From Macrostomum lignano (lineage: Eukaryota), in assembly GCA_002269645.1 (NCBI GenBank), contig NIVC01003833.1, positions 1 through 25,566 on the forward strand: a DNA stretch of 25,566 bases, written 5' to 3'. This document shows positions 3,001 through 18,226 of this stretch, piece by piece (positions within the stretch are counted from its first letter, which is position 1; every line of letters begins with the position of its first letter). The position numbers and the translations under genes were made by a program. Under the pieces are notes generated by a model. The model was given only the letters and a program-made list of their open reading frames with translations, was not told where the DNA came from and did no database searches.

Positions 3001-3624
3001 TCATACCCTTCATACTCTTCTTAATGCATTGCTACACTCGTATCTGCCCACAATAGCATCTCAGCCCCGGCGAATCACTTCCCCTATACAGGCCCACCTG
3101 CCACTTACCGCCCTGCCAGATCTGACCCTAGCAACCGGTCCAGTTTTGGCGCATAGGCTGCTCTCCTTGTAGCCGTCCTGTTCCAGCATCCGCTTCAGCA
3201 GCAGCTGATCTCTGTAGCTGCGCAGCACCGGCCAGATTCCCTGTGTGATCTGCGGGCAGGGGCATCAGTCTAGCTAAGTCTTGGTAATTAAGAGAGGCCG
3301 GTGCCAGCACTGCTTACCTGATTGACGCCCAGTTCGCTGTCGATTCCGGGCAGGTAAGCCAAGTCTGCCTTGGACAGAAAGGACTGCAAATTGGGCGCAT
3401 TAACAGGTGTGTAAATAAACAAATACACACATTTATGCCAGTCGCTAGACACAGCAGAGAAAGCAAATTAAGAGTCTCACGGTGAATCGAAGCAGCATTC
3501 CAATCAGATAGATGAGGTTGGTATCGTAGTGCTTCACTACATATCGGTACTCGTCCTCGGACAGCTCCACTCCCTGCTTGTCCAGCAGGTGCATGTCGCT
3601 CGTGTTGGCGCCTGTTGCGTTCAT
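1..3624 (-). CDS. ROCO-family protein 1 (death-fold-like, LRR, EF-hand, LRR, Roc GTPase); 3' part outside the window; 1-nt frameshift in exon 4
   Basis: Phase-compatible GT-AG exons: 3624-3481, 3383-3318, 3249-3109, 2557-1412, 954-789, 23-<1. The spliced product reads ...LPELK|VLSMQGCENLKTPPQEILAQGMMATIAYLRRLASGSVACYRTKLMFVGLGGAGKTS|LMRALMS. This is the typical last-LRR/PP linker followed by the Roc beta1 strand and P-loop (GxxxxGKT/S). Exon 4 is 1146 nt but its splice phases require 3n+1, so one base is missing. Confidence 0.88.
84..565. repeat. Minisatellite, ~35-bp unit (AGCAGTGAAGTGACGATTTGACTCTGGGGGTTTGA), about 13 copies, inside the ROCO1 intron 788-24
   Basis: Head-to-tail copies with small indels are directly visible. 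Confidence 0.95.
789..954 (-). CDS. ROCO1 exon 5 encoding the Roc P-loop (KLMFVGLGGAGKTS)
   Basis: Acceptor ccctcag at 955 and donor AG|gtgaga at 788. Joins in frame with the exons on both sides. Confidence 0.9.
1412..2557 (-). CDS. ROCO1 exon 4: LRR block, poly-Gly linker, EF-hand, LRR block
   Basis: LxxLxLxxN repeats (LTNLELSRC, LINLQLHENFI, LKFLNLSYNPI, LSLLDASGTQL, LKQLNLSGVPL, LESLVLSNQGI, LRTLVLDNN) are split over ORFs 1793..2509 and 1314..1790. Acceptor ctctag at 2558; donor AAAG|gtatgg at 1411. Confidence 0.9.
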
Positions 3625-4434
3625 TGAGAGCGAATTCGGCGATAGAAAATGGGAACTAAGAAGCAATTTGGGAGCAAAAAGAAACAAAAAAGCAAGCCGC
3701 GCATTCAATCGATTATCGAAGAGCCAAAATTCCGGAGCAACTGGCCAGGCAAATATTGAATAATCAGGCAATCAGGCAGTCGTGCCGGAAAGCCTGGCCT
3801 AGGCACAAGTGCGTTTCGCAGACCGGGGACAGACACTCCCGCCTCCCTGCTGCAGTTCGCAAAGAGAGAGCGACATAAACACTGGGAAAAACAGGCAGCG
3901 GAAAAGTTTACCCGAAAGTCAATCAGACAACGGATTAGCGGCAGGCCTCGCTTTTAGCCAAGCGGACTCCGGCTCGGGCAACCGGCCGCCTAGGGCATCA
4001 ATGCAATCCAGGCTATTAGCCTCAGCTTGTCATGCGAATCAAAACAAGAAGCGATGGGATTATAGAAATTCCCCAAGCGAGCCGGAGCCACATGAGGCGG
4101 GAGAAGCATCTGCCGTTAAGCTTGATATTGACGTCACAGCGCGAGACATCAGCGGGAGCTCAAGCTCTCCAATCCCCAAATGGAGAACTGTTGAGCACTG
4201 TAGCACAAATTTAAACCGACAACTATGAGGCATCTTACGTCTCAAATAGCAGTCAGCATGCTTTGAGGACCTGAAGTCAACCATCATATCTCTCGTATTT
4301 ACCATATGAGCCGTTTAAGTCTATGGCCCACCCGCCTTTAATCTGCACGAACTCGCGCCCGAATATGAATTATGGCCACATTCATTAATCTACCACTCGC
4401 CTAGCCGGAAATCAAAGGGCAAAGGAGGTTTATT
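3625..4434. promoter_or_regulatory. Putative bidirectional promoter / 5' UTR region between ROCO1 and the TTLL10-like gene
   Basis: The two predicted start codons diverge and lie 810 bp apart. No specific promoter motif was identified. Confidence 0.35.
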
Positions 4435-5730
4435 ATGGGCAGACTTCTCGAGCAGCCGCAGCCGCAGCCGCAGCCGCAGCCGCAGCCGCAGCCGCAGCCG
4501 CAGCCGCAGCAACCGCAGAAGCGCCAGTCGACCAGCAGTCGCCAGCCCGTTCCAGCGGCAAAGCAGTCGAACAATGTGGGCTCAGAAGCGAACTGGCTAG
4601 ACTCAGTCAGCACTTTCTCGGTGCCCGAGAAGTTGCTCCGCTTCGCGGCGACCATCCCTCAGGCGCCACCGTCCCGGCTGGCTTCTGCGCCGCCGCCACC
4701 GCTGCAGCTGCTTCCAGCCGGCGGTTTCATGTGCGAGTACCGCAACGGCGCCGCCGATGTGCGCGAGTTCTTCGCCCACCTCGGCTGGCCGCAGCTGCTG
4801 CCGAGGCCCAGCGAGAAAATGTGCGGCGGCGGCAGCGGCAGCAGCGTAGCCAAAAGCGTCGGTACCTGTGGCCCAGCCAACCGGCAGTGGAGCTGCGTCT
4901 GCGTGCAGTCCGCCCTCGCGGCCATGCCCGACTTCGCTTTCTTCTGGGGCAACCTGTCGTCCAGCACATATGCCCTGTGCATGGCGGCCAGCCAGCAGCG
5001 CCACAGGCCGATGGTGATGAACCGCATTCCCTGGGTGACGTTGATCAGCAACAAAAGCCAGCTGGCCGTCACCTGCATGGCGCACAAGCACTCCAGCACC
5101 AGCCTCTGCCTGCAGAGCCACATACCGGCTACATTCATCGTTGATCGAGACACAGACCGGAGCTCTCTGCCGGCGCTGGCCCGGCGCCTTCTGGCCATGC
5201 ACCCGGTGTGGATAGTGAAGCCGCACAACTACGCAAAGGGCGAAGGAATTCAGTTGGCATTTCGCGAGGACGGCGAGGCAGCGATGCTGCGCAGCCTGTC
5301 CAGCGACCGCTGGGGCATCGGCAAGGTGGTGCAGTGCTACATGACCGACCCCATGCTGCTCAGCGGCAAGAAGTTCGACTTGCGCGTCTTCCTACTCCTA
5401 GTAACCACCGGCTCAGGGCTGCTGGCGTTCTACCACACCGGCTACGTGCGGCTGGCGCTGAATGACTTTCTGGTCTGCGACAAGCAGCGCCTGGACACGC
5501 ACCTCACCAACCAGGCAGTGCAGGCCAAACAGTCTGGCTACGAGGCTAACAAGGAGGACACCATCTGGACGGTGCAGCAGATGAACAGCTACCTCAACCA
5601 GCTGCCGAGCAGCGAATTCGGCAACGACTGGACGATCAGGGAGCTGCATCCGAAGGTCAAGTTGCTCGTGGCCGCCCTGGTTGAGGCGCTGGCGCAGCGG
5701 GTGCAGAAGGACCGGCGCAACAGCAGCGGC

Positions 5731-5773
<43 letters not shown>

Positions 5774-6066
5774 GGGAGCGGCACCCGTGCCGGAACACGT
5801 TCAGCCTGCTGGGCCTGGACGTGCTGGTGGACTCGGCCGGCAAGCCCTGGCTGATCGAGGCCAACGCGGATCCCGCGCTCAGCCGGCAAACCCGGACATT
5901 GGAGCGGCTGCTGCCGACCATCACGGCGGAAGCATTCGGTCTGGCCATGGAGATCATCTACAAGTGCCACGGTGCCGACCCGCAGGCACCGGCACCGGCA
6001 GCCGAAGATTTGGCCTTCCTGCAGAACTTCCAGCACATTGGTTTCTACCCAGTGACAGAGAAATGA
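4435..6066 (+). CDS. TTLL10: Tubulin-tyrosine ligase-like protein, TTLL10-like (polyglycylase clade), intronless, 543 aa
   Basis: TTL motifs: WIVKP..AKGEGI, VVQCYMTDPMLLSGKKFDLRVFLL, GYVRLA, HLTN, FSLLGLDVLVD..KPWLIEANADPAL. HLTNQ and KEDTIWTV resemble vertebrate TTLL10 as recalled (HLTNQFMQ, KEHTVWSM). The subfamily call needs a phylogeny. Confidence 0.85.
4453..4509 (+). repeat. (CAGCCG)n coding microsatellite encoding a (QP)n tract
   Basis: Visible hexamer repeat near the TTLL N-terminus. Confidence 0.95.
5734..5772 (+). repeat. (CAG)13 encoding polyQ inside the TTL domain
   Basis: Pure CAG run just before the FSLLGLD motif. Confidence 0.95.
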
Positions 6067-6494
6067 GGGCCGGTCTCGCAGTGCTGCTGCTCAGCTCTGC
6101 TCGCTTTCAGTTTATAAAAGACGCGCGTCGCCAGTCCCTCCCTGGCCGGTGCCTCCTCATTTTAAGCGCCTCAACCTCGCGATGAGGCGTTTGGTTTTTT
6201 GTTGCAGATTTACAAGATAAGGAAGGCGTGAAAGTAAAAAAGTGAAGCAGTTCTTGTCCCGGAAATCTTCAGCATCTTTAATGCGTTTTAAATTTTGCTT
6301 AGCGCTGTTCGTGTGTGCTTTTGAAAATTGAAAAAAATCTCCAAATAGAGACACAGCTGCGCCCGATATTGGGAGACCTGCACCTGCTGCCTTCAACGAG
6401 AATAATTACACAGTAGATTGGCCGTTTGGTAAATTACTTCTAGCTGGCAAAATAAGTACAATAAAAGTAAAAGCATTTTTTGGAGTAGGTTTTT

Positions 6495-6690
6495 GGCATC
6501 ATGGCGCAACGCTTCTTTCGACACCATCCCACAAGCAGTGCTGGGCGACTCTTGACTCCTGCATACAACATACAAGCACGTAGGTGTACAGCGTGTACGC
6601 TATCTGTGCCTTGGAGGTTTGACTCTCATGGGTGTGATCGCACGACAGCCCCAATTGAATGTGACGCGGTTACCACTGAGCTGCTCTGCC
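6495..6690 (-). mobile_element. Degenerate tRNA-derived SINE, family B, copy 1
   Basis: The minus strand begins GGCAGAGCAGCTCAGTGG (A-box-like), matching the head at 12245. It shares CCAAGGCACAG, TGTACAC and TGCGCCA.G.TGCC with the 11684-12245 element. Confidence 0.55.
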
Positions 6691-6741
6691 CTTTTAATTA
6701 TCTAGCAAGGAAGGTGGCAACGCAATTAGATAACAACTTAC

Positions 6742-9700
6742 TCCACTGCAGACCGCGACACAAAAAGTGCAACCGCTGATCTTTCGGCGACTGCATCTTT
6801 ATCCTGGGCGCGATGAAGATGTCCTCGGACTTGAGCGTACCCGGCAGCAGGACAAAGTAGCCGGCATTCCTGGCCGGGTTCCACTTGACGGTCAGGCCGG
6901 CGGTCAGGGAGTATGGCGAGTTCACGCTGGAGGTGCAGCGTCTCGACTGCTTGTGCCGGATGGGCAGCGGAGTGTACTGGCTCTGAAGCGGTGGGAGAGA
7001 GAGTTGCGCCAGGCCAGGTCAGCGCTGAGTTCAGGCAGATGTCAGCAGTCTCTCTTCACCAACCAGAGCTGAATTAGCATTCAAGTCAGGCGTCGGGACT
7101 GCGGCTTAAGCCTCGTCAAAGTCCGTCCGACAGTTTAATTTATTTTTCGCTATCAAACCTGCATGCAATACTTGCCTACGCGGCATTCTACATTGAATTC
7201 TAATACTTCGCTACAGAAGTCCTGCGATAATATTGACTGAGAGCTCCTTGGCATACCCACCTGCTGATTAGGAGCATAGGGGAACACCGACGAAGCTAAT
7301 TTAAAAAATATCATTTCAGATTTCAAACTACAGAAACTTCGCCAATGTCTTGCCAGGTGCAAAAAGCGTGAAAATTAATCAAGCAAGACTCACGTCCAGG
7401 TATTGAAAGTTTCCAAACGGCACGGGCAGATATGTGGGGTAAGCCGACAGATAGTCGTACCACTGATCGAAGCCCTTCAGTTGTTCTGCGGAATTTTGGC
7501 ATTGACCTTTAGACTTAAAGTACATCCAAGACTTAAGCAATGCTCTCAGCTGAACGAGAAGTGTTTTATCTGCTCACTCTTGTCAACTACGGCGTTGATC
7601 TCCTCCGGGTAAAAGCCCAACGGCCGGATGTCGTCAGAGTCGACAGCGAACAGCCTGCCGTGCTGCAGATCCTCCGGCGGCGCCACCTCCAGAAGGCCGT
7701 CGCGGATGCTGGTGACGACGCCCGGCAACCAGGTCTGACCGACTCCGGTGCGGAACAGCAGCAGCATGCCGGGATGGAAGTGCAAGGTGGAAACGTGCTG
7801 CGGACAGTGTAGAAACAATCACGAATTTAGAGTGCCCAATTCGTTATGCGTACTTTTATTTTACTGGGCCAAGCTCGAGGGCATCATAAAGGTTACTTCA
7901 CTAAATTTCTCTGCGCAATAGGTGACACATTTTATCCAGTGCAATATGCCCAAACATAAAAAGTTGACGCCACTACAAACAAGATATGATAATGCGAACG
8001 ACGTGAATCAACTAATACCCGTATGGTACAAAGATGCATTCTGTAATTTTTTGAATTCGTCCTAGAGGCTCGAAAAATGAAATAAAATTACCGCAAACTG
8101 CGGACAGCCCAGAATGGCCAGGTTCCGACTTTCGGATGAGGGCTCTTGCTCCTCGAGTGGGTAGCGAGCTCGCACAAAAGCGTACAGCTGATCCGTTATG
8201 GGAGCTCGCAGCAAAACTTCGCTGTTGATTGAAACTTCCAGTTGGTTGAAGTAGCACTGAAATGAGTTTTTTTATAGTTAATTGCGTCTGCAGTGTCAAA
8301 CACTCGAACAGAATAACACAAATGGTCGGGGATTGCACAAGCATCGCCCAAATGGTCTGGGACTGCACTAGCATCCGCCAAAATGGTCTGGGACTGCACT
8401 AGCATCGCCAAAATGGTCTGGGACTGCACTAGCATCCGCCAAAATGGTCTGGGACTGCACTAGCATCGCCAAAATGGTCTGGGACTGCACTAGCATCCGC
8501 CAAAATGGTCTGGGACTGCACTAGCATCCGCCAAAATGGTCTGGGACTGCACTAGCATCGCTCAGATGGTCTGGGACTGCACTAGCATCCGCCAAAATGG
8601 TCTGGGACTGCACTAGCATCCGCCAAAATGGTCTGGGACTGCACTAGCATCCGCTAAAATGGTCTGGGACTGCACTAGCATCCGCCAAAATGGTCTGGGA
8701 CTGCACTAGCATCGCTCAGCTGGTCTGGGACTGCACTAGCATCGCCAAAATGGTCTGGGACTGCACTAGCATCCGCTAAAATGGTCTGGGACTGCACTAG
8801 CATCCGCCAAAATGGTCTGGGACTGCACTAGCATCGCTCAGATGGTCTGGGACTGCACTAGCATCCGCCAAAATGGTCTGGGACTGCACTAGCATCGCTC
8901 AGCTGGTCTGGGACTGCACTAGCATCGCCAAAATGGTCTGGGACTGCACTAGCATCCGCTAAAATGGTCTGGGACTGCACTAGCATCCGCCAAAATGGTC
9001 TGGGACTGCACTAGCATCGCTCAGATGGTCTGGGACTGCACTAGCATCCGCCAAAATGGTCTGGGACTGCACTAGCATCGCTCAGCTGGTCTGGGACTGC
9101 ACTAGCATCGCCAAAATGGTCTGGGACTGCACTAGCATCCGCCAAAATGGTCTGGGACTGCACTAGCATCCGCCAAAATGGTCTGGGACTGCACTAGCAT
9201 CCGCCAAAATGGTCTGGGACTGCACTAGCATCCGCCAAAATGGTCTGGGACTGCACTAGCATCCGCCAAAATGGTCTGGGACTGCACTAGCATCCGCCAA
9301 AATGGTCTGGGACTGCACTAGCATCCGCCAAAATGGTCTGGGACTGCACTAGCATCCGCCAAAATGGTCTGGGACTGCACTAGCATCCGCCAAAATGGTC
9401 TGGGACCGTACTAGCATCGCCAAAATGGTCTGGGACTGCACTAGCATCCGCCAAAATGGTCTGGGACTGCACTAGCATCCGCCAAAATGGTCTGGGACCG
9501 TACTAGCATCGCCAAAATGGTCTGGGACTGCACTACTCTGGGAGTATATCGCCACTCAAATAAACTACAAAGACGATTGCCCCCCGACACGCCTGAACAA
9601 AATTCAGGAATACAGTCACTTCTATCAGAGAATACAAAATATTTTCGATTCCGTAAGGCTTAAAAGTATCGATTTGAGTGTCTCTATCCAGGTTTTTGTA

Positions 9701-12700
9701 AGTTACATCTTTACAACTATTAGAAGCAGTTGATCAGAGAATAAGATGAAATGACGACTAACATCGTAGTGGTCGTTGTAGCAGCAGCCGGTGATTCTGA
9801 GCACCACATCCGTGATCGGCTCGTCAGCGGGCAGACTGTCGTCCTTAAGTTGCCTGACAAACTCCCAGTCGTGAAGAGCGCTTTTCTTCAAGCTAAACTT
9901 CAGCTGACGATCGCGAAGCGTCAGGCCAATGATGGCGTCCTCACTGGCGTCGTCATGCAGGGCCAACCAGACGGCCTGCTCGCAGCCGGGACGGTGCAGG
10001 AAGCTGACCTCCAGGTGGTCGAAGCTGGCGTGCCGCATCGGCAGGCGAGACCGGAGCAGCGTCTCCAGCGTCACCGGCTGATCCGAAGACTTTTCTTCGT
10101 CGAATCTGGGCCGGCTGGCCGCGACCAGCAGGTTGCCCTGCAAAGAGGCTGGCAGGCCAGACACCACGTCGAATGCCTTGGATGCGAAGGTCGGGTAGAC
10201 GCGACAGAAGTGGCGCCACATCTTCGCCACGGTTTTCTTCCACAAGAAGCAGTGCTCGCAGGAGAAGGAGTTCTGGTATCGGTCTATCCAGTCGTGCTGC
10301 GGAAACGGCGCCAGACGGTACCACATGAAGCGCCACTCGGCGTCGGTCATCTGCTTGGCGCGGCACTTGCTGCAGCTCTTGTGGTTGGCGAGTGTCCGGC
10401 CGACCTCCGGTACCGAAAAGGTGTTCTTTAGGCCCGAGTGAAAGCATTCACCGCGGCAGTAGACTCGCAGCTGCGGAGTTGATCCGGTTGGGTCGTGGTC
10501 AATTGGGTTGCGGCCAGTGAGGTTGTGGTCAATTGGGTTGCGGCCAGTGAGGTTGTGGTCAGTTAGGTTGCGGCCATTGAGGTTGTGGTCAATTGGGTTG
10601 CGGCCAGTGAGGTTGTGGTCAGTTGGGTTGTTGTTAGGTATTTGGTTATGATCGGATGGGTTGTGTTCGGTTGGATTGTAGACATTTGGGTTGCGGTAAG
10701 TTGCTGGGTTGCCGTCAGTTGCTGGGTTGGTGCCAGTTAAGTTGTGGTTAGTACTGAGACCACTAATCTACACAACAAACGGCAAACCATTTCTCCTACC
10801 GTCAATTACCTTCGATGGCCCCTCACTCAGATCACCCTTCACCAAACCTTGCCTCACATCTAAATACGCGTTGCACGTCATTACACCATTCATTGCAAAA
10901 TTCTAAGCACCTTAAAGCCTGTATGCACGCATAATTATGATGAAGCAATAATTAATGCTCTATAAAAACGCACCTTGTGATGCAGGTAGGGATACTCGGC
11001 AGCCACGGACTCCAAGGTGGTCAGCAGGTCGCTGAAGCAGGACCAGATGTACTCTTTGAGCGAGTCGCTGTTGGCCCCTGGCACAGTTTCATTCATGCGG
11101 CACTCGAAGTCAATGGAAGACGAAGCCAGGGCTGCGGTGCGGTGCGGATTTTAGGAGTCGTTTTGCAAAGGGAAACACTACTCAGAAGCAGAAAACTACA
11201 AAGCTTATCCCTCCCGTTTAGTGTAGCTGTAGCTGGGTCACGGAATAACAGTGAAGGAAAAAGAAAGATTGAGGCGGCTCATTTATGCATTCCCAATTTA
11301 CGCTCTTGTGGAATAGCTCCATCAATGGACGAACTCTTGGCTTTAACTAATGTTAAATTTACATTAAATACTGAATGCATCTGGACTGCCTAGGAACGAA
11401 ATTATCTCATTCATTTTGGATATCAATTGTCGAAGCAAATGAGATTTCAAACGTGACTTAATAATCATTATTTTAATTATGCCCAGGAAGGAGATGAAAG
11501 CGCGAATTATGGCTGCGGTAACTTGCGATAAGAAGAGATAGGCATGCATTCAGCTTCCCGCAGAATTTTACATCTTTAAAGAGAGAATCGGGACTTTTTG
11601 CTATTCAGCACTGTGGTGGAGTCGCTTTGGGCGCTGCCGTGGATCAAGCGGAGGACCCTTCAGACCCTTCAGCGCAGGCATACTATTTTTTATTAAAGGC
11701 AGGGGCTGTGGGCACCCTGGCGCACTTTAAGCGACATTGTCACACAACCGGCGAGAGGCATTGCTGCCCATTCCGCCGACTCCCCTGAGCAGGCACACAA
11801 GCGCGCGGATGCGTACGCAGTGATACGCACAGGCACACAATCACACAGGAGTGTACAGCGGCCCTAACTTTATTTATCGTTAGGCATGTACACTTCACTG
11901 TGCCTTGGGGGTTGTCCATCAAGGACGTTATTTACACGAGCAGAGCCAAGCCGAGATTCCAATTTAGCCCCAAATTAATGCGACTGCACTTGGAATCGAG
12001 CCTGGCACATCAGAGCGCTTCGCTGGACCACCGGGCTACGGCCCCTGCGCTCGCAGGCACACACTCGGCCCTAACCTTTTCGTTGTCAAACATGTACACT
12101 CTCTGTGCCCTTGGGGTCGGGGACGGATGGCCATGGGGCGAGCTTCGCAGCACGAATCAGATTTTTGCGCACGAGTCCCAAATTAATGTGGCCGCGCACA
12201 GAATCGACTTTGAGTTGAACGCATTTGCCGCTGAGCTGCTCTGCCTGCTACACCCAGGGCTCACTCGAATGCAGGCCGTAGGTGCAGAGGATGTCGCAGA
12301 CTCCGCGCTGCACGTGCATCCCGGTGCGCCACACCTGCACCACGCCGGTGGCCACGGGACTCTGCATGCAGGCGGTGGCGAACCTCGCCAGCAGGTTGGC
12401 GGGAAAGCCGACGCGGAACTTCACGGAGAACAGCAGGCAAATATCGCCGGGTGGGAAGTCCTCGGACTGCAGGTCCGGCATGTACATGCTCTTGTGGTGC
12501 CGCATGGAAAGCTTCTCTTCCGTGGCGCTGAATCGGATGGACACGCGGGGCTCCAGGCGCGACCAGAGGAAGTAGCGCCGGCTCGAGGCCTCCGCTGCGT
12601 GCTGAAGGCGGGCGACCCGGCCGGCCTGGGTGGACTCGCGAACCGTGTCCGTGTGGCCGAGCAGGCCGAAGCGAAGGAGGATGCGGCGCAAGGTCTCAGC

Positions 12701-15700
12701 CTGTGGAAGTTTGGTTTTTGCATCGCTAAGCATTAAGTTATTACTAATATGATGGACCCTCGATACCTTAGAAACGTTATGGTCAACGATTTAGTTCATC
12801 AGATTGCTATTTGAAGCCATCTGTGCGCACGTCGCAAACATTAACCAGATGGCTTGTCCGACATCACCAGACACATGAAAACAACTTCATAAACAATAGA
12901 AAAACACGTGCTAAGTCGTTCTAAAGCAAATAAACAGAAAAGCATTTCCAGAGACATACTTCATTTCCGTGGTGGCAGCTTTGAGGAATCACTAGTCAAT
13001 AGTCATACTGTCGCCTTTTGAGCTCTTCAGGAATTAGTATTCATAGCTCACAAAATGCATGACTCACCTCATCCTCGGTGGCTCCGGCAGCCAGCAGTTC
13101 AGCGCGCAGCTCCGCCTCGCTGAGGGCCGGCACATTGCGGCCGAGCGTCCAGCAGCTGTCGCCGTTGCGGTAGTCGGCGATGGCATCGAGATGGGCTAGA
13201 CAGGACATGAACCAGGCCAGGTCCAGCACCACTGGCTGGTTCGTCCCTTCCGGGAAGAAAAGCAGCTTGCCCTGCGATTAAATTTTTAAGAACTGTGATT
13301 TTCTTATCGAGTTTTACTACTCGTAGTAACAAGTACATAGCAGCAAATGAACCCTTTGGAAAGAATTTAAAATTATATACAGATTGCTACTGAATCTATC
13401 AAAATATATGTTATTTTTCTATCCTTCTATTCTTTGGGCAGACCAAGGCGCCGCAGTCCAGCAATCCCGCACCATTTGATGCAGCTTCTTCAGCAGCGCC
13501 ACAGTCCGCCGGCTCTCTCGCTGCGGCAGGCCAAGCTCAGACATCAGCACATTCAGTGGGAAGATTCGCCGCCACGACTGCTGCTGCTGCTGTTGCGACT
13601 GCTGAGCAGCCAGAAAGTCGCTCAGCCGATCAGCCAGTTGCCAGTTGGACTCGGTGAGGCGACGCGTCTCCCACAGCTGCAGCGACTCGGCGGCTGTTCT
13701 GGCCAGTTGGGTCACGTGACGCGCCAGACGATTACTCTGAGGTAGACAGGTGAGGAGGCAAGTGGAAATCGCAAATTGCACATCAAGGCTACAGTTCACC
13801 CGCAGCAGTAAGGAGGGGCAAGCAGTGACGCTCATTCTGACACCTAAGCCTCTAAATTCTACATGCAAGTGAAATAAGGAACGAACTTTGTTATGTTCGA
13901 CTGCTGAAACGAATTACTGTCTGTGATTCGTTTCTCATTTTAGTTTCGTACTGCTCGTTAGTAATAAATCCCTAGAATAGATTTCTCATTCGCTATGGAG
14001 TAATTCTCAATAGTTCCCGCCAGTCTAAACGTCACACAATGTACTCTTACCTCCTTTTCGATTCCCGCTGACTCAGCCACGGCTGCTCCAGCCGGATTCA
14101 GCTCCCGCTCGTGCTCCTTCACCAACAGCAGGTACTTGATCACCGCGTACACGTAGAGCCACATGCAGTTGATAATGTTAAACCACCGTTTCACCTGCGA
14201 GATGAGCGCTGTTTGTAGGAATTATAAATTAAATACGCAGAAGAAAGAATCAACTCTTACAGTTTCTCCAAAGGTCTCCCACTCTGGAACAAGGGCGGTC
14301 AGGTCCGCCAGCAGCTTGGCGTGTCTGCCCGAGAGAGACTCCGTCTGAAAGCGGATTTTTTGGGTTTGACTTAAGACGAATCAGGAAATTTTGGATTAGT
14401 TTACAAAGTGTCTCACAATGTAATTCGTGTCCTTGAAGCGCAACAGAAAGCGCGTCTCCGACACAAGGTTCTTTGCCGTTGGCCAGGCGTCGTCTTCCGT
14501 GAATGGAATGTCGAATATGAGCATAACGCACTTCATTGTGGTCACTACGACGGGTGGAGGAGCCGAAAGGGAGCGCAACTGAAAGAACAGAATGAGCATT
14601 TACAACTGTTGATAATCTGTGCATTCAGATTCAGATTGCATGTCAGATTCAGCTAACACTGACCTCCATGAAGTCCGCCTTGGTGCACCGGTCCAACGCG
14701 TCAATGGCAAACATCTACAAACAAGTAAGCAGTTGTTCTTTGTTTTACAGTACTTGTACCCGTACTGTACTTGAAGTAGTCTATTCCTAAAGCAAATGGC
14801 GAACAAGCAACTTACGTAATCGTGCTCCGCCCAATACTGCACTTGAGCTTGTACGTTGGAGTCCACCTTTACTTCCCGGAGTGTAGTCTCGAATACCTGA
14901 GAATGTTTGAATTCAAATTCCGGTTTAAAAAATCTGGCTCTTTCTGAGCCTAGGTGTCTTTTTGAATACAAGTAGTTTTCATTTGAAGCTCACCCAGTCT
15001 TCATTGAAGCCTTCGACTGGAACGGCAACCAAAGTGATGGGAAAGTGGGTTACATCCGCGCACTGAATCGACTGAACGTAACGCCACTGGTGCGGAAAGT
15101 CCTTGTCGTAGCAACTGAAGTTATGATTGAAGCAGCGTATTTCGTGTCTGAGAGATTATCTGATAGGCTGCTCAGAGCACAAAACGAAACTATTATTCTT
15201 ACCTATTTAAGTGCTCCTTCTCCAAGTGCTCCTTCATGTTGTCTACCTGATCCCTGAGCATGTTTTCCAGGTCGGATTTCAGCGAGGCAACATTCTCAAC
15301 CCCTTTCTGGCTGCTCACCGTCGCGACTAGAAGCAGCGGCGCTTCGAACACCTGCGACGGCGAGGCGCGTGACGATTAATGAAGGCGAAATACCTACGAG
15401 CGCACATTAAATGGACAGATCTGTCAGACTCACCGCTCCACGAACTGCGTCAATCATTCGCATAATTTCTAGCTGGGGATTCTCTGTGCGCTCCGCATCC
15501 ACTACCAGCACGAAACCGGCTGTGTTGGACATGAACAGCGAGCTGTACACCTGAGCAAGGGGTTTGGCGAAAAGTAATTGGGGACTAAGTACGATTCTAA
15601 ACATTTGAAAATCGTCCTCATCTGCGATGCCTATGGTCAAGCACAGGCTAAACTATTTAAACAAATTCATAGATTTGACAAGGTTTTGAATTAGGCAAGA

Positions 15701-18226
15701 CCTAATGATCTCTTTAAGGCACTGTGCCCTGCGTGCTATACGCTTTAATATTTTATTGCAAATATATATTAATAACTTTCGATCATTGCACTTATTTAGA
15801 GAGGCTTGAAGCCTACGTAGTAAGAGCGTCGGACTCAAGACTGAAAGGTCGGGGGTTGGATTCTCGACCCACTCGGAACAATTTGTGTCCTTGAGCAGGA
15901 CACTTAACTCTGCATTGCTTCAGTTCACCCAGCTGTAAAATGGGTGCCAGCATTAGCTGGGGTAACTGAGGGGGTGTGTATGGCGACCCCCCCCCCAGTC
16001 CGTGCTTGCTCGTGGGATCGACACACGCAAGGCTATCAAAACACGCTTGAATTCACTTCACCCAGTTTAACACTCCTTTCACTTGACCAGTGCACTTACT
16101 AGGTCTGCGCGCATCTCGAACACAGTCAGGTCCAGGTCGCCAACAGTGGCTGAGAGCGCTCGAAAAGTCGGTGGGGGCTGCACAGACGACGTTACCGCCG
16201 ATTTTGACGACGACGGCCTCGACTTGGAGCTGGAAGATGGCTGAGCTCCGCCCACCGCGCCTGGTAGAGCTAGGGCGCCAATGCTGACGGTTACGGCCGG
16301 GTCGCAGATGATGGCCAGCTTCACTGGTAGGCGAGCGATGGTGGACACCGGTCCTGGCGTGTGGGGGGACAGCAAGTGGGTTCTTGGCAAAAAAGTAGTC
16401 AAATTTCGCCTTGATTTTCGGCAGTTCCCAAAGCCCGCACTGCGAACTAACAAAGTAAACTGACATCATCATGTTCGTTTACAAACAACATAACATTTTC
16501 CTGTCTGATCAATGCTCTCCATAGATAGTCCCAACTCTATAAGTAATCTGATATGATGCACGTTACCAAGGGCAGCTATATTTGATCCGATGCCCAGTTA
16601 CAACAGGCACAGCAGCAAAAATTCTAAGAGAAGTTTTCCCTATGCATATATTCTAGTTATAGTCGATTTTTTCCATGCAGAGCCCGTTATAAAAGCTACC
16701 TGTCAGTCCATAGCCCAAACGTTTAACACAACAGCTGGGAAACAATCATTCGGGACTGGAGTCCTGCTTGAGCCCACCCTAAATGACCTGTTGTCCTCGG
16801 GCACAAATTTGATTTCTCCTCACTTTGTCTAGCTATTACAGTGTAAGTCTACCGAAACCGACCTCCCAATTGGAACTTATAGCTCGACTTGCGAGTGTAG
16901 CAGCGTCCTACATGCACTTTTGCTGCTCATGTTAAGTAGCTCTTAAGCAATGGCACTCACCGTCGATAAACTGACACGCCGGATCGCTCAGAACTTGAAA
17001 ACCGAGCTGCCTGGAGCCGCAGTGTGTCAGTCCGGTGCCCAGCATGCTGACAGACTTCAGGTCTCGACAGTGCTTTCCCAGGTAATGCAGACTTCTTTCA
17101 GTGAGCAGCCGGCAGCCGTCAAGGTTAAGCTGCTGAAGGCGGGGGAACGCGCGGGCCAGGTGAGCCATGCCGTCATCCCGAAGGTGCCGGCAACCAGCGC
17201 AGGAGACTCGAGCAACTCGGACTCTGGCCTCGTCTGGCACGGATGTTTCCAGCAGGTGAAACACCTCATCAGTTAGCTGTTCTATGCCGTCAAAATCAAG
17301 GTGAAACTCTACGCCTTTCTCGCCGAACCAAGTTGGTAGTTTTGCCTGCGTAAGGCGGTTTTATGGATCGTTAATGTAGCATGTCCACGGCACATTTATT
17401 ATACCCGTTAGACTTTTTATGACGTCATTATTGTAACAGTTGGACTGTCTATGACCTCGATATATTGTACCAGTTGGACTGTCTATGGCATCGATATTGT
17501 TACCAGTTGGACTGTCCATGAAATTGATATTGTACCAGTTGGACTGTCAACGACATTGATATTGTACAAGTTAGAATGCCTATGACATTGATATTGTACT
17601 AGTTTGACTATCTGTGACATTGATATTGTAAGTTGGACGGTCTGTGGCATCGATATTGTACCAGGTAGACTGTCTATGGCTGGTTTGATGTACCATGCAG
17701 GTTTATGGTACCAATCCTGTTTATTGCCAGCAAACTTTTAAGAATCCACGCCAAGGATCTTTGCTATTGTGAAAACTGTATCGTTAATTTTACCATCTGA
17801 TCTTATATTCAATATATCTTTATTTAACCTTCATATCGTTTGTAATGCTACAGTGATAAGTGCAATACTACTTCTAGTAGTACAATTTGATTCATAGAAG
17901 CAAATTCTGCAATCAAGCCAGTCAGGCGAGTCTACCGTAATCACATCTGCGGATTGACTGCGTGCGCATGCTTTTATAAATCACGCGTGAAGGTATAATG
18001 CCAAAATATTATTAGAGGAAGCCTTGTCAATATGCAATACATGTGTAAATAAGTATTCTAAATATAGTACTCGCTGCGCTAAAACAAGGCTTTGACCGCA
18101 TCCATTCAAACATAAAGAGCCAATCAAATCGTACAAACTCACCAACAGCTTTCTAAGCGGGATCTGCTCCTGCACCTCCAGCTCATTGTAGAAATGTTCA
18201 AAGTTTATTAGCTTCACTGCAGACAT
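6742..18226 (-). CDS. ROCO-like protein 2 (~1450 aa): Cys-containing LRR, degenerate Roc with dynein MTBD-like insertion, COR, uncharacterised C-terminal domains
   Basis: Phase-consistent GT-AG exons with no internal stops: 18226-18143, 17345-16961, 16639-16567, 16439-16100, 15550-15434, 15351-15203, 15147-14994, 14896-14816, 14714-14664, 14578-14417, 14344-14261, 14194-14051, 13736-13473, 13271-13068, 12700-12265, 11131-10974, 10470-9763, 8256-8092, 7797-7578, 7485-7394, (7221-7180), 6982-6742. These sum to 4354 nt. The terminal exon is uncertain, possibly 6701-6694 (AT AAT TAA). Exons 3 and 21 are the least certain. Confidence 0.8.
8325..9535. repeat. Minisatellite, 30/31-bp unit (CAAAATGGTCTGGGACTGCACTAGCATCCGC), about 39 copies, in a ROCO2 intron
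   Basis: Near-identical head-to-tail units with no spacers. Confidence 0.97.
9763..10470 (-). CDS. ROCO2 exon 17: Cys-rich end of COR plus a beta-rich, weakly SPRY-like region
   Basis: 708-nt open phase 0-0 exon (ccgcag acceptor, GAT|gttagt donor) extending ORF 9703..10350 upstream. It contains CRGEC, CSKC and CEHC motifs. Confidence 0.75.
10495..10630. repeat. Minisatellite, 30-bp unit (AATTGGGTTGCGGCCAGTGAGGTTGTGGTC), about 4.5 copies, decaying to ~10730
   Basis: Visible tandem copies in the ROCO2 intron between exons 16 and 17. Confidence 0.9.
10974..13736 (-). CDS. ROCO2 exons 13-16: COR domain (COR-A and COR-B)
   Basis: COR-A-like: LLKKLHQM|GKLLFF..VVLDLAWFMSCL and ETLRRILLRFGLL. COR-B-like: KFRVGFPANLLARF..VWRTGMHV and LTTLESVAAEYPYL..VYC. 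Confidence 0.8.
11684..12245 (-). mobile_element. Tandem dimer of tRNA-derived SINE family B units
   Basis: Two units with ~207-bp periodicity (CGGCCCTAAC at 11859 and 12066; CCAAATTAATG at ~11971 and 12178). The unit starting at 12045 has A-box TAGCCCGGTGG, B-box GGCTCGATTCC and an A-rich end near 11690. Confidence 0.6.
14051..14714 (-). CDS. ROCO2 exons 9-12: dynein heavy chain stalk / microtubule-binding-domain-like module
   Basis: The spliced sequence AIDALDRCTKADFMELRSLSAPPPVVVTTMKCVMLIF..DAWPTAKNLVSETRFLLRF..ESLSGRHAKLL..VPEWETFGETVKRWFNIINCMWLYVYAVIKY matches the dynein stalk-head consensus (A..AL..I.K.D..E.RS...PP..V......V..LL....W..AK......F...L ... P.F..E.V.R.S.....M..WV.A...Y). 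Confidence 0.82.
15203..16439 (-). CDS. ROCO2 exons 4-6: Roc-like G-domain with degenerate nucleotide-binding motifs
   Basis: PVKLAIICDPAVTVSIGALAL (beta1/G1 position), DLDLTVFEMRADL|VYSSLFMSNTAGFVLVVD (G3 to beta4) and APLLLVATVSS (beta5/G4) follow the order of elements in Roc. Confidence 0.7.
15801..16001 (+). mobile_element. CORE-type tRNA-derived SINE, family A, copy 1 (intronic, antisense to ROCO2)
   Basis: tRNA-like head followed by TGTGTCCTTGAGCAGGACACTTAACTCTGCATTGCTTCAGTTCACCCAGCTGTAAAATGGG, which resembles the CORE/MIR core. Nearly identical to 25037-25232. Confidence 0.85.
16961..17345 (-). CDS. ROCO2 exon 2: Cys-containing (FBXL/AMN1-type) leucine-rich repeats
   Basis: LDFDGIEQLTDEVF, VSCAGCRHLRDDGMAHL, LQQLNLDGCRLLTERSLHYL and LKSVSMLGT fit the LxxLxLxxCxxLTDxxL pattern. 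Confidence 0.85.
17430..17680. repeat. Degenerate minisatellite, ~32-bp unit (TTGTACCAGTTGGACTGTCTATGACATTGATA), about 8 copies, in ROCO2 intron 1
   Basis: Visible tandem copies with several substitutions. Confidence 0.9.

What the first reader, a model, noticed from the sequence alone, without database searches (positions are those of the whole stretch)
14051..14896. Dynein-type microtubule-binding stalk head grafted into a ROCO G-domain
Seen: four small exons splice in frame to ~130 aa that follow the dynein heavy-chain stalk head almost motif for motif (A.DAL, K.D..ELRS..PP..V, W..AK..V....F, PEW...E.VKR, M...V.AV..Y). The module sits after the Roc G4 strand and a coiled-coil-like helix, and before the Roc terminal helix and COR. 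Known: this fold is the helical hairpin tip by which dynein binds tubulin, and LRRK2 binds microtubules through its Roc domain. I know of no ROCO protein carrying a dynein MTBD. Inference: a motor-less microtubule or axoneme anchor on a ROCO scaffold, possibly with affinity set by registry shifts in the short flanking coiled coil.
Basis: partly seen in the sequence, partly recalled or inferred. Interest (0 to 1): 0.92.

Follow-up and report, generated by a model that had tools for sequence, protein, structure and literature searches.

The report
Dynein microtubule-binding module in flatworm ROCO protein
A flatworm (Macrostomum lignano) gene of the LRRK2-related ROCO family carries a true copy of the small domain dynein motors use to grip microtubules, with no motor attached; the domain is real and undescribed in this setting, but it does not sit inside the protein's GTPase domain as first proposed.

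Summary
On the minus strand, five exons in 14896-14051 splice in frame with canonical AG/GT borders. They encode a peptide homologous to the dynein stalk tip and microtubule-binding domain (MTBD):
- DNAH6 matches at E=3.3e-9.
- An MTBD profile built without this sequence scores it at 67 bits.
- An AlphaFold model (pLDDT 90) has dynein stalk/MTBD structures as its top 47 Foldseek hits.

The gene is a real ROCO gene. Its true LRR-Roc-COR unit lies about 1,000 residues downstream: the Roc P-loop is at window 829-791, and the rest of Roc and the COR lie beyond the window's low end.

The segments flanking the module are not demonstrably Roc or COR. The upstream part matches no GTPase family and lacks the G1, G3 and G4 motifs in two flatworm species. 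The downstream part shows only weak, collinear COR similarity (hhalign E=6e-4, Pfam below threshold).

So "MTBD in a ROCO protein" is supported, and "grafted into a Roc G-domain" is not.

The most likely function is a motor-less microtubule or axoneme anchor; this is inferred, not shown. I found no literature on such an architecture. Motor-less proteins with 3-4 tandem MTBDs do exist in marine protist transcriptomes. I rate it a new variant of a known kind, interest about 0.6.

The parts
14816..14896 (-). Exon Ec (81 nt, phase 0-0): VFETTLREVKVDSNVQAQVQYWAEHDY. This is the helix that forms the outgoing stalk strand (CC1-like).
   Evidence: AG/GT borders and frame. First exon of NCBI model P0002. 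Helix 2-35 in the AF2 model.
14664..14714 (-). Exon Ed (51 nt): MFAIDALDRCTKADFME. End of CC1, with the conserved A..AL..L.K.D..E motif.
   Evidence: Aligned to DNAH6 2780-2797. Conserved columns in A1 and A3.
14417..14578 (-). Exon Ee (162 nt): LRSLSAPPPVVV...WPTAKNLVSETRFLLRFKDTNYI. MTBD helices H1-H4, including the PP motif and the invariant W..AK of H3.
14261..14344 (-). Exon Ef (84 nt): TESLSGRHAKLLADLTALVPEWETFGET. MTBD helices H4/H5.
14051..14194 (-). Exon Eg (144 nt): VKRWFNIINCMWLYVYAVIKYLLLVKEHERELNPAGAAVAESAGIEKE. MTBD helix H6 running into the return stalk strand (CC2). The dynein CC2 proline (VEPKR) is replaced here by KEHEREL.
13473..13736 (-). Exon H (264 nt): continuation of the CC2-like long helix (SNRLARHVTQLARTAAESLQLWE...), a poly-Q stretch, then the start of the COR-A-like motif (...LLKKLHQM).
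   Evidence: DNAH6 alignment extends to ...RLARHVTQ. AF2 helix 160-218. Pfam COR-A sub-threshold hit starts here.
13068..13271 (-). Exon I: GKLLFFPEGTNQPVVLDLAWFMSCLAHL... COR-A-like segment (sub-threshold).
   Evidence: Pfam COR-A E=0.0026, 18 bits against a cut-off of 35.3. hhalign against the gene's own COR. The intron position before the G is shared with L003.
9763..12700 (-). Exons J (12700-12265), K (11131-10974) and Lx (10470-9763): the rest of the COR-like region (FSVKFRVGFPANLL, VWRTGMHV, EYPYLHHKLRVYCRGEC), then a Cys-rich conserved region of unknown fold.
   Evidence: Conserved in Cichlidogyrus P0003 (35% identity, E=2e-38) and in L003. COR-B E=0.16-0.18 in the L003 species. hhalign E=6.4e-4.
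14994..16446 (-). Exons X2 (16446-16100), X3 (15550-15434), Ea (15351-15203) and Eb (15147-14994): a conserved alpha/beta region upstream of the module with no GTPase motifs (KLAIICDPAVTVS, TVFEMRADL, LLLVATVSSQ), followed by a long helix.
   Evidence: Splice sites and frame. tblastn to the monogenean contig, E=8e-27, collinear. No Pfam GTPase hit and no PDB hit. hhalign against the gene's own Roc E=0.067.
16961..17345 (-). Exon X1: FBXL/RNI-type leucine-rich repeats at the N-terminal side. The true start codon was not found.
   Evidence: Pfam LRR_At5g56370 E=2e-5, below cut-off. Collinear with X2-Ea in the monogenean ORF.
3109..8256 (-). Seven middle exons of the same gene (8256-8092, 7797-7579, 7483-7394, 6982-6740, 3609-3481, 3383-3318, 3249-3109). 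No recognised domains.
   Evidence: Exact mapping of P0002. Partly conserved in P0003. No Pfam hit.
1410..2557 (-). Canonical LRR block of the downstream ROCO unit (LRR_14, LRR_8, LRR_4).
   Evidence: P0002 Pfam annotation. ORFs. Coordinates.
2..952 (-). Start of the true Roc G-domain: an exon ending with the P-loop KLMFVGLGGAGKT (829-791), an intron holding a 35-nt tandem repeat (85-534), then the next Roc exon starting at 25 (SLMRALMS). The rest of Roc and the COR lie beyond the window.
   Evidence: Continuation in L001. Pfam Roc 2.6e-23, COR-A 5.3e-26, COR-B 1.6e-20. LRRK2 E=6e-28.

Best explanation
The interval encodes a true dynein-derived stalk-tip cassette. It has a short outgoing helix (CC1-like), the six-helix MTBD, and a long return helix (CC2-like). 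The cassette is carried on consecutive symmetric phase-0 exons. It lies in the N-terminal half of a very large, flatworm-restricted ROCO protein of Macrostomum lignano.

Reading from the N-terminus, the order of parts is:
1. FBXL-type LRR.
2. A conserved alpha/beta region with no nucleotide-binding motifs.
3. The MTBD hairpin.
4. A highly diverged, probably COR-like region.
5. A Cys-rich region and a linker.
6. A canonical LRR-Roc-COR unit.

The module is closest to single-headed inner-arm dynein DNAH6. It was most likely acquired by exon shuffling from an axonemal dynein gene (inferred).

There is no AAA+ ring to shift the coiled-coil registry. The module therefore most likely acts as a passive, nucleotide-independent anchor that places the ROCO scaffold, with its active Roc-COR switch, on microtubules or ciliary doublets (inferred).

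Shown: exon structure, homology, fold, host-gene identity. Inferred: microtubule binding, the origin by exon shuffling, the cellular role.
For: - Exons and frame. Independent NCBI model identical across 18 exons.
- Homology: DNAH6 E=3.3e-9, with the top 14 PDB sequence hits all dynein at the stalk tip. Pfam MT is the best Pfam family. An MTBD HMM built without this sequence gives 67 bits, E=7e-23. The exhaustive search returns dynein and MTBD proteins for query residues 28-220.
- Fold: AF2 pLDDT 90.4 and pTM 0.71. The Foldseek top 47 are all dynein stalk/MTBD; 6kjn TM 0.75 and rmsd 2.6 A, 6l4p_B 0.71, 6rzb_C 0.67.
- Core retention: 22 of 32 well-conserved MTBD positions are kept, including K-D-E, PP and the invariant W..AK of H3. 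Core net charge is within the range of real MTBDs. H1, H3 and H6 are the tubulin-contact helices (PMC6629372).
- Host gene is ROCO: the monogenean orthologue P0003 joins the COR-like part to LRR-Roc. The downstream unit scores Roc 2.6e-23, COR-A 5e-26, COR-B 2e-20 and LRRK2 6e-28.
- Upstream exons belong to the same gene: tblastn E=8e-27, collinear in the monogenean.
- Seven consecutive phase 0-0 exons fit a shuffled cassette.
Against: - Microtubule binding is untested.
- The start of H6 is altered (consensus S.AA becomes F.II, and the WVR of DNAH6 becomes YVY). The CC2 proline kink is lost and core net charge is slightly negative (-1 against a mean of +2.4). Affinity could therefore be low, or the surface could serve another partner.
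- The positionally equivalent segment of the monogenean orthologue is not recognisably an MTBD. The module is therefore not demonstrably conserved across the family.
- The Pfam MT score is below the curated cut-off.
- The AF2 model used an MSA made of MTBD homologues, which favours that fold.
- I did not inspect transcript evidence directly. Exon Eb has only ORF and splice support, plus partial support from the garbled model P0001.
Confidence: 0.62

Rival explanations
1. Fossil-ROCO reading, close to the first reader's. The N-terminal half is a degenerate internal copy of an LRR-Roc-COR unit. The alpha/beta region would be a pseudo-Roc that has lost nucleotide binding, and the MTBD hairpin would be inserted at or near the Roc-COR junction. 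The protein would then be a tandem ROCO whose dead first unit became a microtubule anchor.
For: - The order LRR, alpha/beta region, [module], COR-like mirrors LRR-Roc-COR.
- The three-species COR-like profile aligns collinearly over 150 columns with the gene's own COR, hhalign E=6.4e-4.
- Pfam COR-A scores E=0.0026-0.0085 in M. lignano and COR-B E=0.16-0.18 in the L003 species, in the right order and at the right profile positions.
- hhalign places the alpha/beta profile on the true Roc in the expected beta3-beta4-alpha3-beta5 register.
- The low-confidence AF2 run gave an alternating strand/helix pattern there.
Against: - The upstream region matches no GTPase family at E<=10 and no PDB chain, alone or as a profile. 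The same tools detect the true Roc-COR with 332 hits.
- Alignment with the gene's own Roc gives z=0 to 0.7 and hhalign E=0.067, probability 0.8%.
- G1, G3 and G4 motifs are absent in both species.
- The COR signals are all below curated thresholds. hhalign probability is only 28%, pairwise z=0.7-1.4, and there is no PDB hit.
- The structure model of the flanks was unusable (pLDDT 35.5).
Confidence: 0.35
2. The fold survives but tubulin binding does not. The module would be an exapted helical hairpin used as a spacer, a dimerisation element or a binding site for another partner, with no role on microtubules.
For: - Substitutions cluster at the start of H6, the CC2 proline is lost, and net charge is -1.
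- The monogenean counterpart has diverged beyond recognition while its flanks are conserved. This suggests weak constraint on MTBD-specific features across the family.
Against: - About 30% identity to dyneins across the whole domain, with the H1 PP motif and the invariant H3 W..AK retained. All five exons are open despite long divergence. This argues for constraint on the native fold and at least part of the interface.
- Net charge is within the range of bona fide MTBDs.
Confidence: 0.3
3. Annotation artefact. The MTBD exons would be a dynein gene fragment or pseudo-exons lying in an intron, wrongly joined to the ROCO exons by prediction.
For: I did not examine RNA-seq junctions directly. The UniProt model P0001 is garbled and skips exon Ed.
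Against: - Five consecutive open, phase-compatible exons with canonical splice sites lie within a 15-exon open frame of 1167 aa.
- Two independent gene models on two assemblies join them to both flanks.
- There are no AAA or other dynein exons nearby.
- The monogenean orthologue has a helical segment of similar length between the same conserved flanks.
Confidence: 0.04

Closest known systems
Dynein heavy-chain stalk tip / MTBD (Pfam MT PF12777), closest to single-headed inner-arm dynein DNAH6
   Same: Homologous sequence over the end of CC1, H1-H6 and the start of CC2 (E=3.3e-9). Same predicted fold. Conserved K-D-E, PP, W..AK and (W/Y)V.A...Y positions. No large H2-H3 flap.
   Different: - Not embedded between AAA4 and AAA5, and no motor anywhere in the gene.
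- CC1 is only about 35 residues.
- The CC2 proline is lost and the start of H6 is substituted.
- There are inserts of 4 and 5 residues (H2-H3, H4-H5).
- The Pfam score is below the gathering cut-off.
ROCO proteins (LRRK2, LRRK1, MFHAS1-type, bacterial Roco)
   Same: The gene contains a canonical LRR-Roc-COR unit, scoring LRRK2 E=6e-28, LRRK1 6e-20 and C. tepidum Roco 1e-19. Pfam Roc, COR-A and COR-B are all well above cut-off.
   Different: - A long N-terminal extension of more than 1,300 residues carries an MTBD and a possible degenerate second unit.
- No kinase was seen within the sequence available (window plus L001).
- LRRK2 binds microtubules through its Roc-COR surface when oligomerised (established knowledge). 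This protein instead carries a dedicated tubulin-binding domain from a motor.
Engineered fixed-registry MTBD fusions (seryl-tRNA synthetase-MTBD, e.g. PDB 3ERR, 6RZB)
   Same: An MTBD on a short antiparallel coiled coil without an AAA+ ring. Affinity is set by a static registry, not by ATP. 3err_A and 6rzb_C are structural matches.
   Different: Those are laboratory constructs. This would be a natural counterpart, and its registry and affinity are unknown.
Uncharacterised marine-protist proteins with 3-4 tandem MTBDs and no AAA modules (P0005-P0010, P0016)
   Same: Motor-less use of the dynein MTBD. They are among the best database matches to the module.
   Different: They are tandem arrays in otherwise unrelated proteins, with no LRR, Roc or COR, and they come from protist transcriptomes. 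Their Pfam MT scores are well above cut-off, unlike the flatworm module.

Membership tests
Dynein stalk/MTBD domain (Pfam MT, PF12777) | Significant sequence similarity to dynein heavy-chain stalk-tip sequences | tested here: met
   phmmer against PDB gives DNAH6 at E=3.3e-9, and the top 14 hits are all dynein. An independent 28-sequence MTBD HMM gives 67 bits, E=7e-23.
Dynein stalk/MTBD domain (Pfam MT, PF12777) | Score above Pfam's curated gathering cut-off (24 bits) | tested here: not met
   13.8-15.2 bits on the module and 12.5 bits on the whole model. MT is nevertheless the top-ranked family, matched at profile positions 87-151.
Dynein stalk/MTBD domain (Pfam MT, PF12777) | Six-helix bundle between two long antiparallel helices (CC1, CC2) | tested here: met
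   AF2 pLDDT 90.4. Helices 2-35, then short helices spanning 39-127, then 132-218. The Foldseek top 47 are all dynein stalk/MTBD, with TM up to 0.75. Caveat: the MSA was made of MTBD homologues.
Dynein stalk/MTBD domain (Pfam MT, PF12777) | Microtubule binding through H1, H3 and H6 | not testable with these tools
   The H1 PP motif and the invariant H3 W..AK are kept. The start of H6 is substituted. Interface definition is from PMC6629372.
Dynein heavy chain (the motor protein) | MTBD embedded between AAA4 and AAA5 of a six-AAA+ ring, with linker and tail | tested here: not met
   No AAA or dynein family hit in the 1167-aa model or in P0002. The flanks are LRR, alpha/beta and COR-like.
ROCO family (host gene) | A Roc G-domain with intact G1-G4 motifs | tested here: met
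   The motifs KLMFVGLGGAGKT (window 829-791), WDFAGQ and VVGTHCDK are present. Pfam Roc scores E=2.6e-23 and LRRK2 scores E=6e-28. This domain lies about 1,000 residues downstream of the module.
ROCO family (host gene) | A COR domain immediately after Roc | tested here: met
   In L001, beyond the low end of the window: COR-A E=5.3e-26 and COR-B E=1.6e-20.
Roc G-domain (segment immediately upstream of the module, model residues about 166-411) | Profile or sequence similarity to Roc/Ras GTPases | tested here: not met
   No GTPase family at E<=10. No PDB hit alone or as a two-species profile. Against the gene's own Roc: z=0.0 and 0.66, hhalign E=0.067, probability 0.8%.
Roc G-domain (segment immediately upstream of the module, model residues about 166-411) | G1 P-loop GxxxxGK[ST], G3 DxxG, G4 [NT]KxD/THxD | tested here: not met
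   M. lignano has ICDPAVTVS, FEMRAD and ATVSSQ. The monogenean has VSNPGINLN, VEMHTQ and NLYKSS.
Roc G-domain (segment immediately upstream of the module, model residues about 166-411) | Ras-like alpha/beta fold | tested here: inconclusive
   The single-sequence AF2 model was unusable (pLDDT 35.5). No further structure jobs were available.
COR domain (segment immediately downstream of the module, model residues about 612-923) | Profile similarity to COR-A and COR-B | tested here: inconclusive
   - COR-A scores E=0.0026-0.0085, 16-18 bits against a cut-off of 35.3.
- COR-B scores E=0.16-0.18 in the L003 species.
- The three-species profile against the gene's own COR gives hhalign E=6.4e-4, probability 28%, 150 collinear columns.
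- No PDB hit, and pairwise z=0.7-1.4.

The most novel reading that the evidence does not exclude
The protein is a tandem ROCO. An ancient internal copy of LRR-Roc-COR lost nucleotide binding. At its Roc-COR junction it captured the stalk tip of an inner-arm dynein by exon shuffling, which turned the dead unit into a fixed-registry microtubule or doublet anchor. That anchor positions a second, active Roc-COR switch on the lattice. This would be a natural, hard-wired version of the microtubule association that LRRK2 achieves only by oligomerisation. Together with the protist multi-MTBD proteins, it would show that the dynein MTBD is a mobile, reusable tubulin-binding module and not a part exclusive to motors.
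Probability: 0.3. Interest if true: 0.8.

Novelty: new variant of a known kind. Interest (0 to 1): 0.6.

Why it matters
The dynein MTBD is treated as a part unique to dynein heavy chains, with affinity controlled from the AAA+ ring through coiled-coil registry. A natural motor-less copy inside a signalling scaffold of the LRRK2 family shows that the stalk tip can work as a portable domain. The motor-less tandem copies in protists point the same way.

This gives a natural fixed-registry MTBD to compare with the engineered SRS fusions.

It also links ROCO proteins to microtubules by a route different from LRRK2's Roc-COR-mediated filament binding. M. lignano is a tractable model with RNAi and transgenesis, so localisation and loss-of-function tests are feasible.

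There are limits. The family is narrow: only flatworm sequences were identified, plus two fragments of unknown source. The function is unknown, and the module is not recognisably conserved in the one other full orthologue.

Tried and rejected
1. I first read the window as two ROCO-like genes, at about 17.3-9.7 kb and about 2.6-0 kb. P0002 splices across both, and the monogenean P0003 is collinear across both, so they are one gene.
2. Single-sequence AlphaFold of model residues 160-733 (alpha/beta region through the start of the COR-like region) gave pLDDT 35.5. I did not use it for any structural claim or fold search.
3. Pairwise local and global alignments of the flanks against the gene's own Roc and COR, with shuffle controls, were not significant.
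4. Family profiles A2, A4 and A5 against PDB found no LRRK or Roco hit. A designed TIM barrel and a triosephosphate isomerase came up as chance hits.
5. The monogenean N-terminus was tested as an MTBD. It gave no PDB hit. The pairwise score was reached by 86 of 500 shuffles. The MTBD HMM gave only marginal matches, one of them out of order.
6. A possible F-box upstream (LLSVPTEMICKLQKHV, 20767-20477) has no Pfam support and I dropped it.
7. The word-indexed protein searches returned only gene models of the query's own gene: P0001 and P0002 for the M. lignano queries, P0003 for its own query.
8. The UniProt name 'FSA_C domain-containing protein' for P0001 is not borne out by anything found here.
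9. The TTL gene nested in an intron is not mirrored in the monogenean locus, so I treat the nesting as probably coincidental.
Full report
**What is in the interval.** The window is eukaryotic and the relevant gene is on the minus strand. Between 14896 and 14051 there are five short exons: 14896-14816, 14714-14664, 14578-14417, 14344-14261 and 14194-14051. Each has an AG acceptor and a GT donor, and each is a multiple of three bases long. Together they read in one frame for 174 aa.

I extended the model by hand to 15 exons from 17345 to 9703, giving one open frame of 1167 aa with canonical splice sites throughout. The NCBI model BOX15_Mlig030103g1 of Macrostomum lignano (P0002, partial) starts exactly at exon 14896. 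It reproduces every junction from there on at 100% identity and maps onto the window in 18 exons. The window therefore comes from M. lignano. A second, garbled UniProt model (P0001) from another assembly also joins the upstream exons to these ones.

**Is it a dynein MTBD? Yes.** A plain phmmer search of the spliced 219-aa module against all PDB chains gives DNAH6 from three entries at E=3.3e-9, 4e-8 and 8e-7. The match runs from query 31-184 to residues about 2780-2927, the stalk tip. The top 14 hits are all axonemal dynein heavy chains or isolated MTBD constructs matched at the same place. One of them carries a depositor label of 'radial spoke head protein 9' but is 4583 aa long and matches like DNAH10.

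Pfam MT is the best Pfam family but lies below its cut-off, at 15.2 bits against 24. This is why no annotation mentions it.

The exhaustive HMMER search of 1.84 billion representatives with P0002 residues 1-765 gave only 18 hits. Twelve of them (P0005-P0011 and P0014-P0018) matched query residues about 27-221, and the ten scanned all carry Pfam MT. An HMM built from 28 of those MTBDs, without the flatworm sequence, scores the flatworm module at 67 bits, E=7e-23.

With that alignment AlphaFold gives pLDDT 90.4 and pTM 0.71. The model has a long helix, a bundle of short helices, and a long return helix. In Foldseek against the PDB the first 47 matches are all dynein stalk or MTBD structures at probability 1.00. 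Examples are 6kjn (TM 0.75, rmsd 2.6 A), 6l4p_B (0.71) and the microtubule-bound 6rzb_C (0.67). The MSA was made of MTBD homologues, so the model is not independent of the sequence result, but the two agree.

The module keeps 22 of 32 well-conserved MTBD positions. These include the K-D-E motif at the end of CC1, the PP at the start of H1, and the invariant W..AK of H3. Its core net charge of -1 lies inside the range of the other MTBDs, -2 to +8. The differences are these:
- The start of H6 is substituted.
- The CC2 proline (VEPKR) is replaced.
- There are two small inserts.
- The outgoing helix is only about 35 residues long.

**What is the host gene?** It is a ROCO gene, but not in the way proposed. 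The only substantial relative outside the locus is P0003 from the monogenean flatworm Cichlidogyrus casuarinus. It is collinear with the M. lignano protein through the COR-like part, the Cys-rich part and the middle exons. It then continues into LRRs and a Pfam-significant Roc domain.

In the window the matching Roc P-loop, KLMFVGLGGAGKT, is at 829-791, and the next Roc exon begins at position 25. The NCBI contig (L001) continues beyond the window's low end and shows the rest of Roc (WDFAGQ, VVGTHCDK) and a canonical COR. This unit scores Pfam Roc 2.6e-23, COR-A 5.3e-26 and COR-B 1.6e-20. It hits LRRK2 at 6e-28, LRRK1 at 6e-20 and bacterial Roco at 1e-19. So what first looked like two genes is one, and the true Roc-COR lies about 1,000 residues downstream of the MTBD module.

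**The immediate flanks: upstream.** The upstream region (exons 16446-14994) is real and conserved. M. lignano residues 15-333 match the monogenean contig collinearly at E=8e-27. This also shows that the LRR exon at 17345-16961 belongs to the gene. The monogenean gene is split into two calls by an assembly gap.

This region matches no GTPase family even at E<=10, and no PDB chain alone or as a two-species profile. Both species lack the P-loop, DxxG and NKxD/THxD motifs. hhalign does place it on the gene's own Roc in the expected strand-helix register, but only at E=0.067 and probability 0.8%. Shuffle tests give z of 0 to 0.7.

**The immediate flanks: downstream.** The downstream region gives Pfam COR-A at E=0.0026-0.0085, about half the required score. 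A third orthologue fragment (L003, from sequencing run ERR14224705, organism unknown) gives COR-B at E=0.18, at the expected place. A three-species profile aligns collinearly over 150 columns with the gene's own COR at hhalign E=6.4e-4, probability 28%. No PDB hit appears.

I conclude that a diverged COR downstream is more likely than not. A dead Roc upstream is possible but unproven. The specific claim of an insertion inside a Roc G-domain is not supported. The one structure job spent on the flanks failed (pLDDT 35.5).

**How it probably works.** Shown: a dynein-type stalk tip, on seven consecutive phase 0-0 exons, sits in the N-terminal half of a ROCO protein that has no AAA+ modules.

Inferred:
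- The cassette came from an inner-arm (DNAH6-type) dynein gene by exon shuffling.
- With no ring to slide the coiled coil, it acts as a static anchor to microtubules or ciliary doublets. That would place the LRR and Roc-COR parts on the lattice.

H1, H3 and H6 form the tubulin interface in dyneins (PMC6629372). H1 and H3 features are kept here and H6 is partly changed, so binding is plausible but not assured.

The monogenean segment in the same position is of similar length and helical. It is not recognisably an MTBD. Either the module is ancestral and decayed in the parasite, or it replaced an older helical segment in the Macrostomum lineage.

**Novelty.** Full-text searches found nothing on the following:
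- a dynein MTBD in a ROCO protein;
- MTBD-like domains outside dynein;
- this gene.

The searched library is incomplete, so this is absence of evidence only. The motor-less MTBD is not unique in sequence space. Seven protist proteins from MMETSP, Tara and JGI data carry two to four tandem MTBDs with strong Pfam MT scores and no AAA domains. I rate the finding a new variant of a known kind.

The most striking part of the claim, insertion into the G-domain, does not hold, the family is narrow, and the function is untested. Still, a natural motor-less MTBD in an LRRK2-family scaffold in a tractable animal is worth following up.

Noticed in passing
window 4435-6066 (+): An intronless 543-aa ORF encodes a tubulin-tyrosine-ligase-family (TTL/TTLL) protein (Pfam TTL E=2.5e-35). 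It is nested antisense inside the 6740-to-3609 intron of the MTBD/ROCO gene. So a tubulin-modifying enzyme sits inside a gene that carries a tubulin-binding module. The nesting is not seen at the monogenean locus, so it may be coincidence.
   Followed up: partly
proteins P0005-P0010 and P0016 (MMETSP, Tara/MERC and JGI metatranscriptomes): Marine-protist proteins of 386-1207 aa carry two to four tandem dynein-type MTBDs (Pfam MT E=1e-31 to 1e-61; 23 copies delimited) and no AAA modules. Some have a Trp-rich repeated N-terminal region. I found no literature on them.
   Followed up: partly
window 14896-13068 (-): Seven consecutive exons are symmetric phase 0-0 (81, 51, 162, 84, 144, 264 and 204 nt). 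Any of them could be skipped or shuffled without breaking the frame. The UniProt model P0001 in fact lacks the 51-nt exon.
   Followed up: no
L002 (Cichlidogyrus casuarinus JBJKFK010001275.1) 3595-4939 and 5502-12830: The monogenean orthologue is annotated as two genes, separated by a run of N at about 5380-5470. The upstream 306-aa call is the LRR plus alpha/beta region of the same protein (tblastn E=8e-27).
   Followed up: yes
window 23163-22432 (-): A separate upstream gene encodes a DXD-motif glycosyltransferase (Pfam Gly_transf_sug E=3.7e-7).
   Followed up: partly
window 85-534, 8320-9535, 10487-10703, 17396-17695: Four tandem-repeat arrays. Three lie in introns of the gene: a 35-nt unit x13 in the Roc intron, a 31-nt unit x40, and a 15/30-nt unit that reads as a spurious NPxDHNLTGRN peptide repeat. 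The fourth, a 32-nt unit, lies just upstream of the LRR exon.
   Followed up: no
window 10470-9763 (-) and P0003 575-690, P0004, L003: A conserved Cys-rich region follows the COR-like part (HHKLRxYCRGxC ... CxKCxxxQM ... CxxC). It is shared by all family members found and matches no Pfam family, and it may bind zinc.
   Followed up: no
protein P0001 (UniProt A0A1I8FPG5): This M. lignano model of the same gene is named 'FSA_C domain-containing protein'. It is frame-shifted and mis-spliced relative to the window, and nothing found here supports the name.
   Followed up: partly
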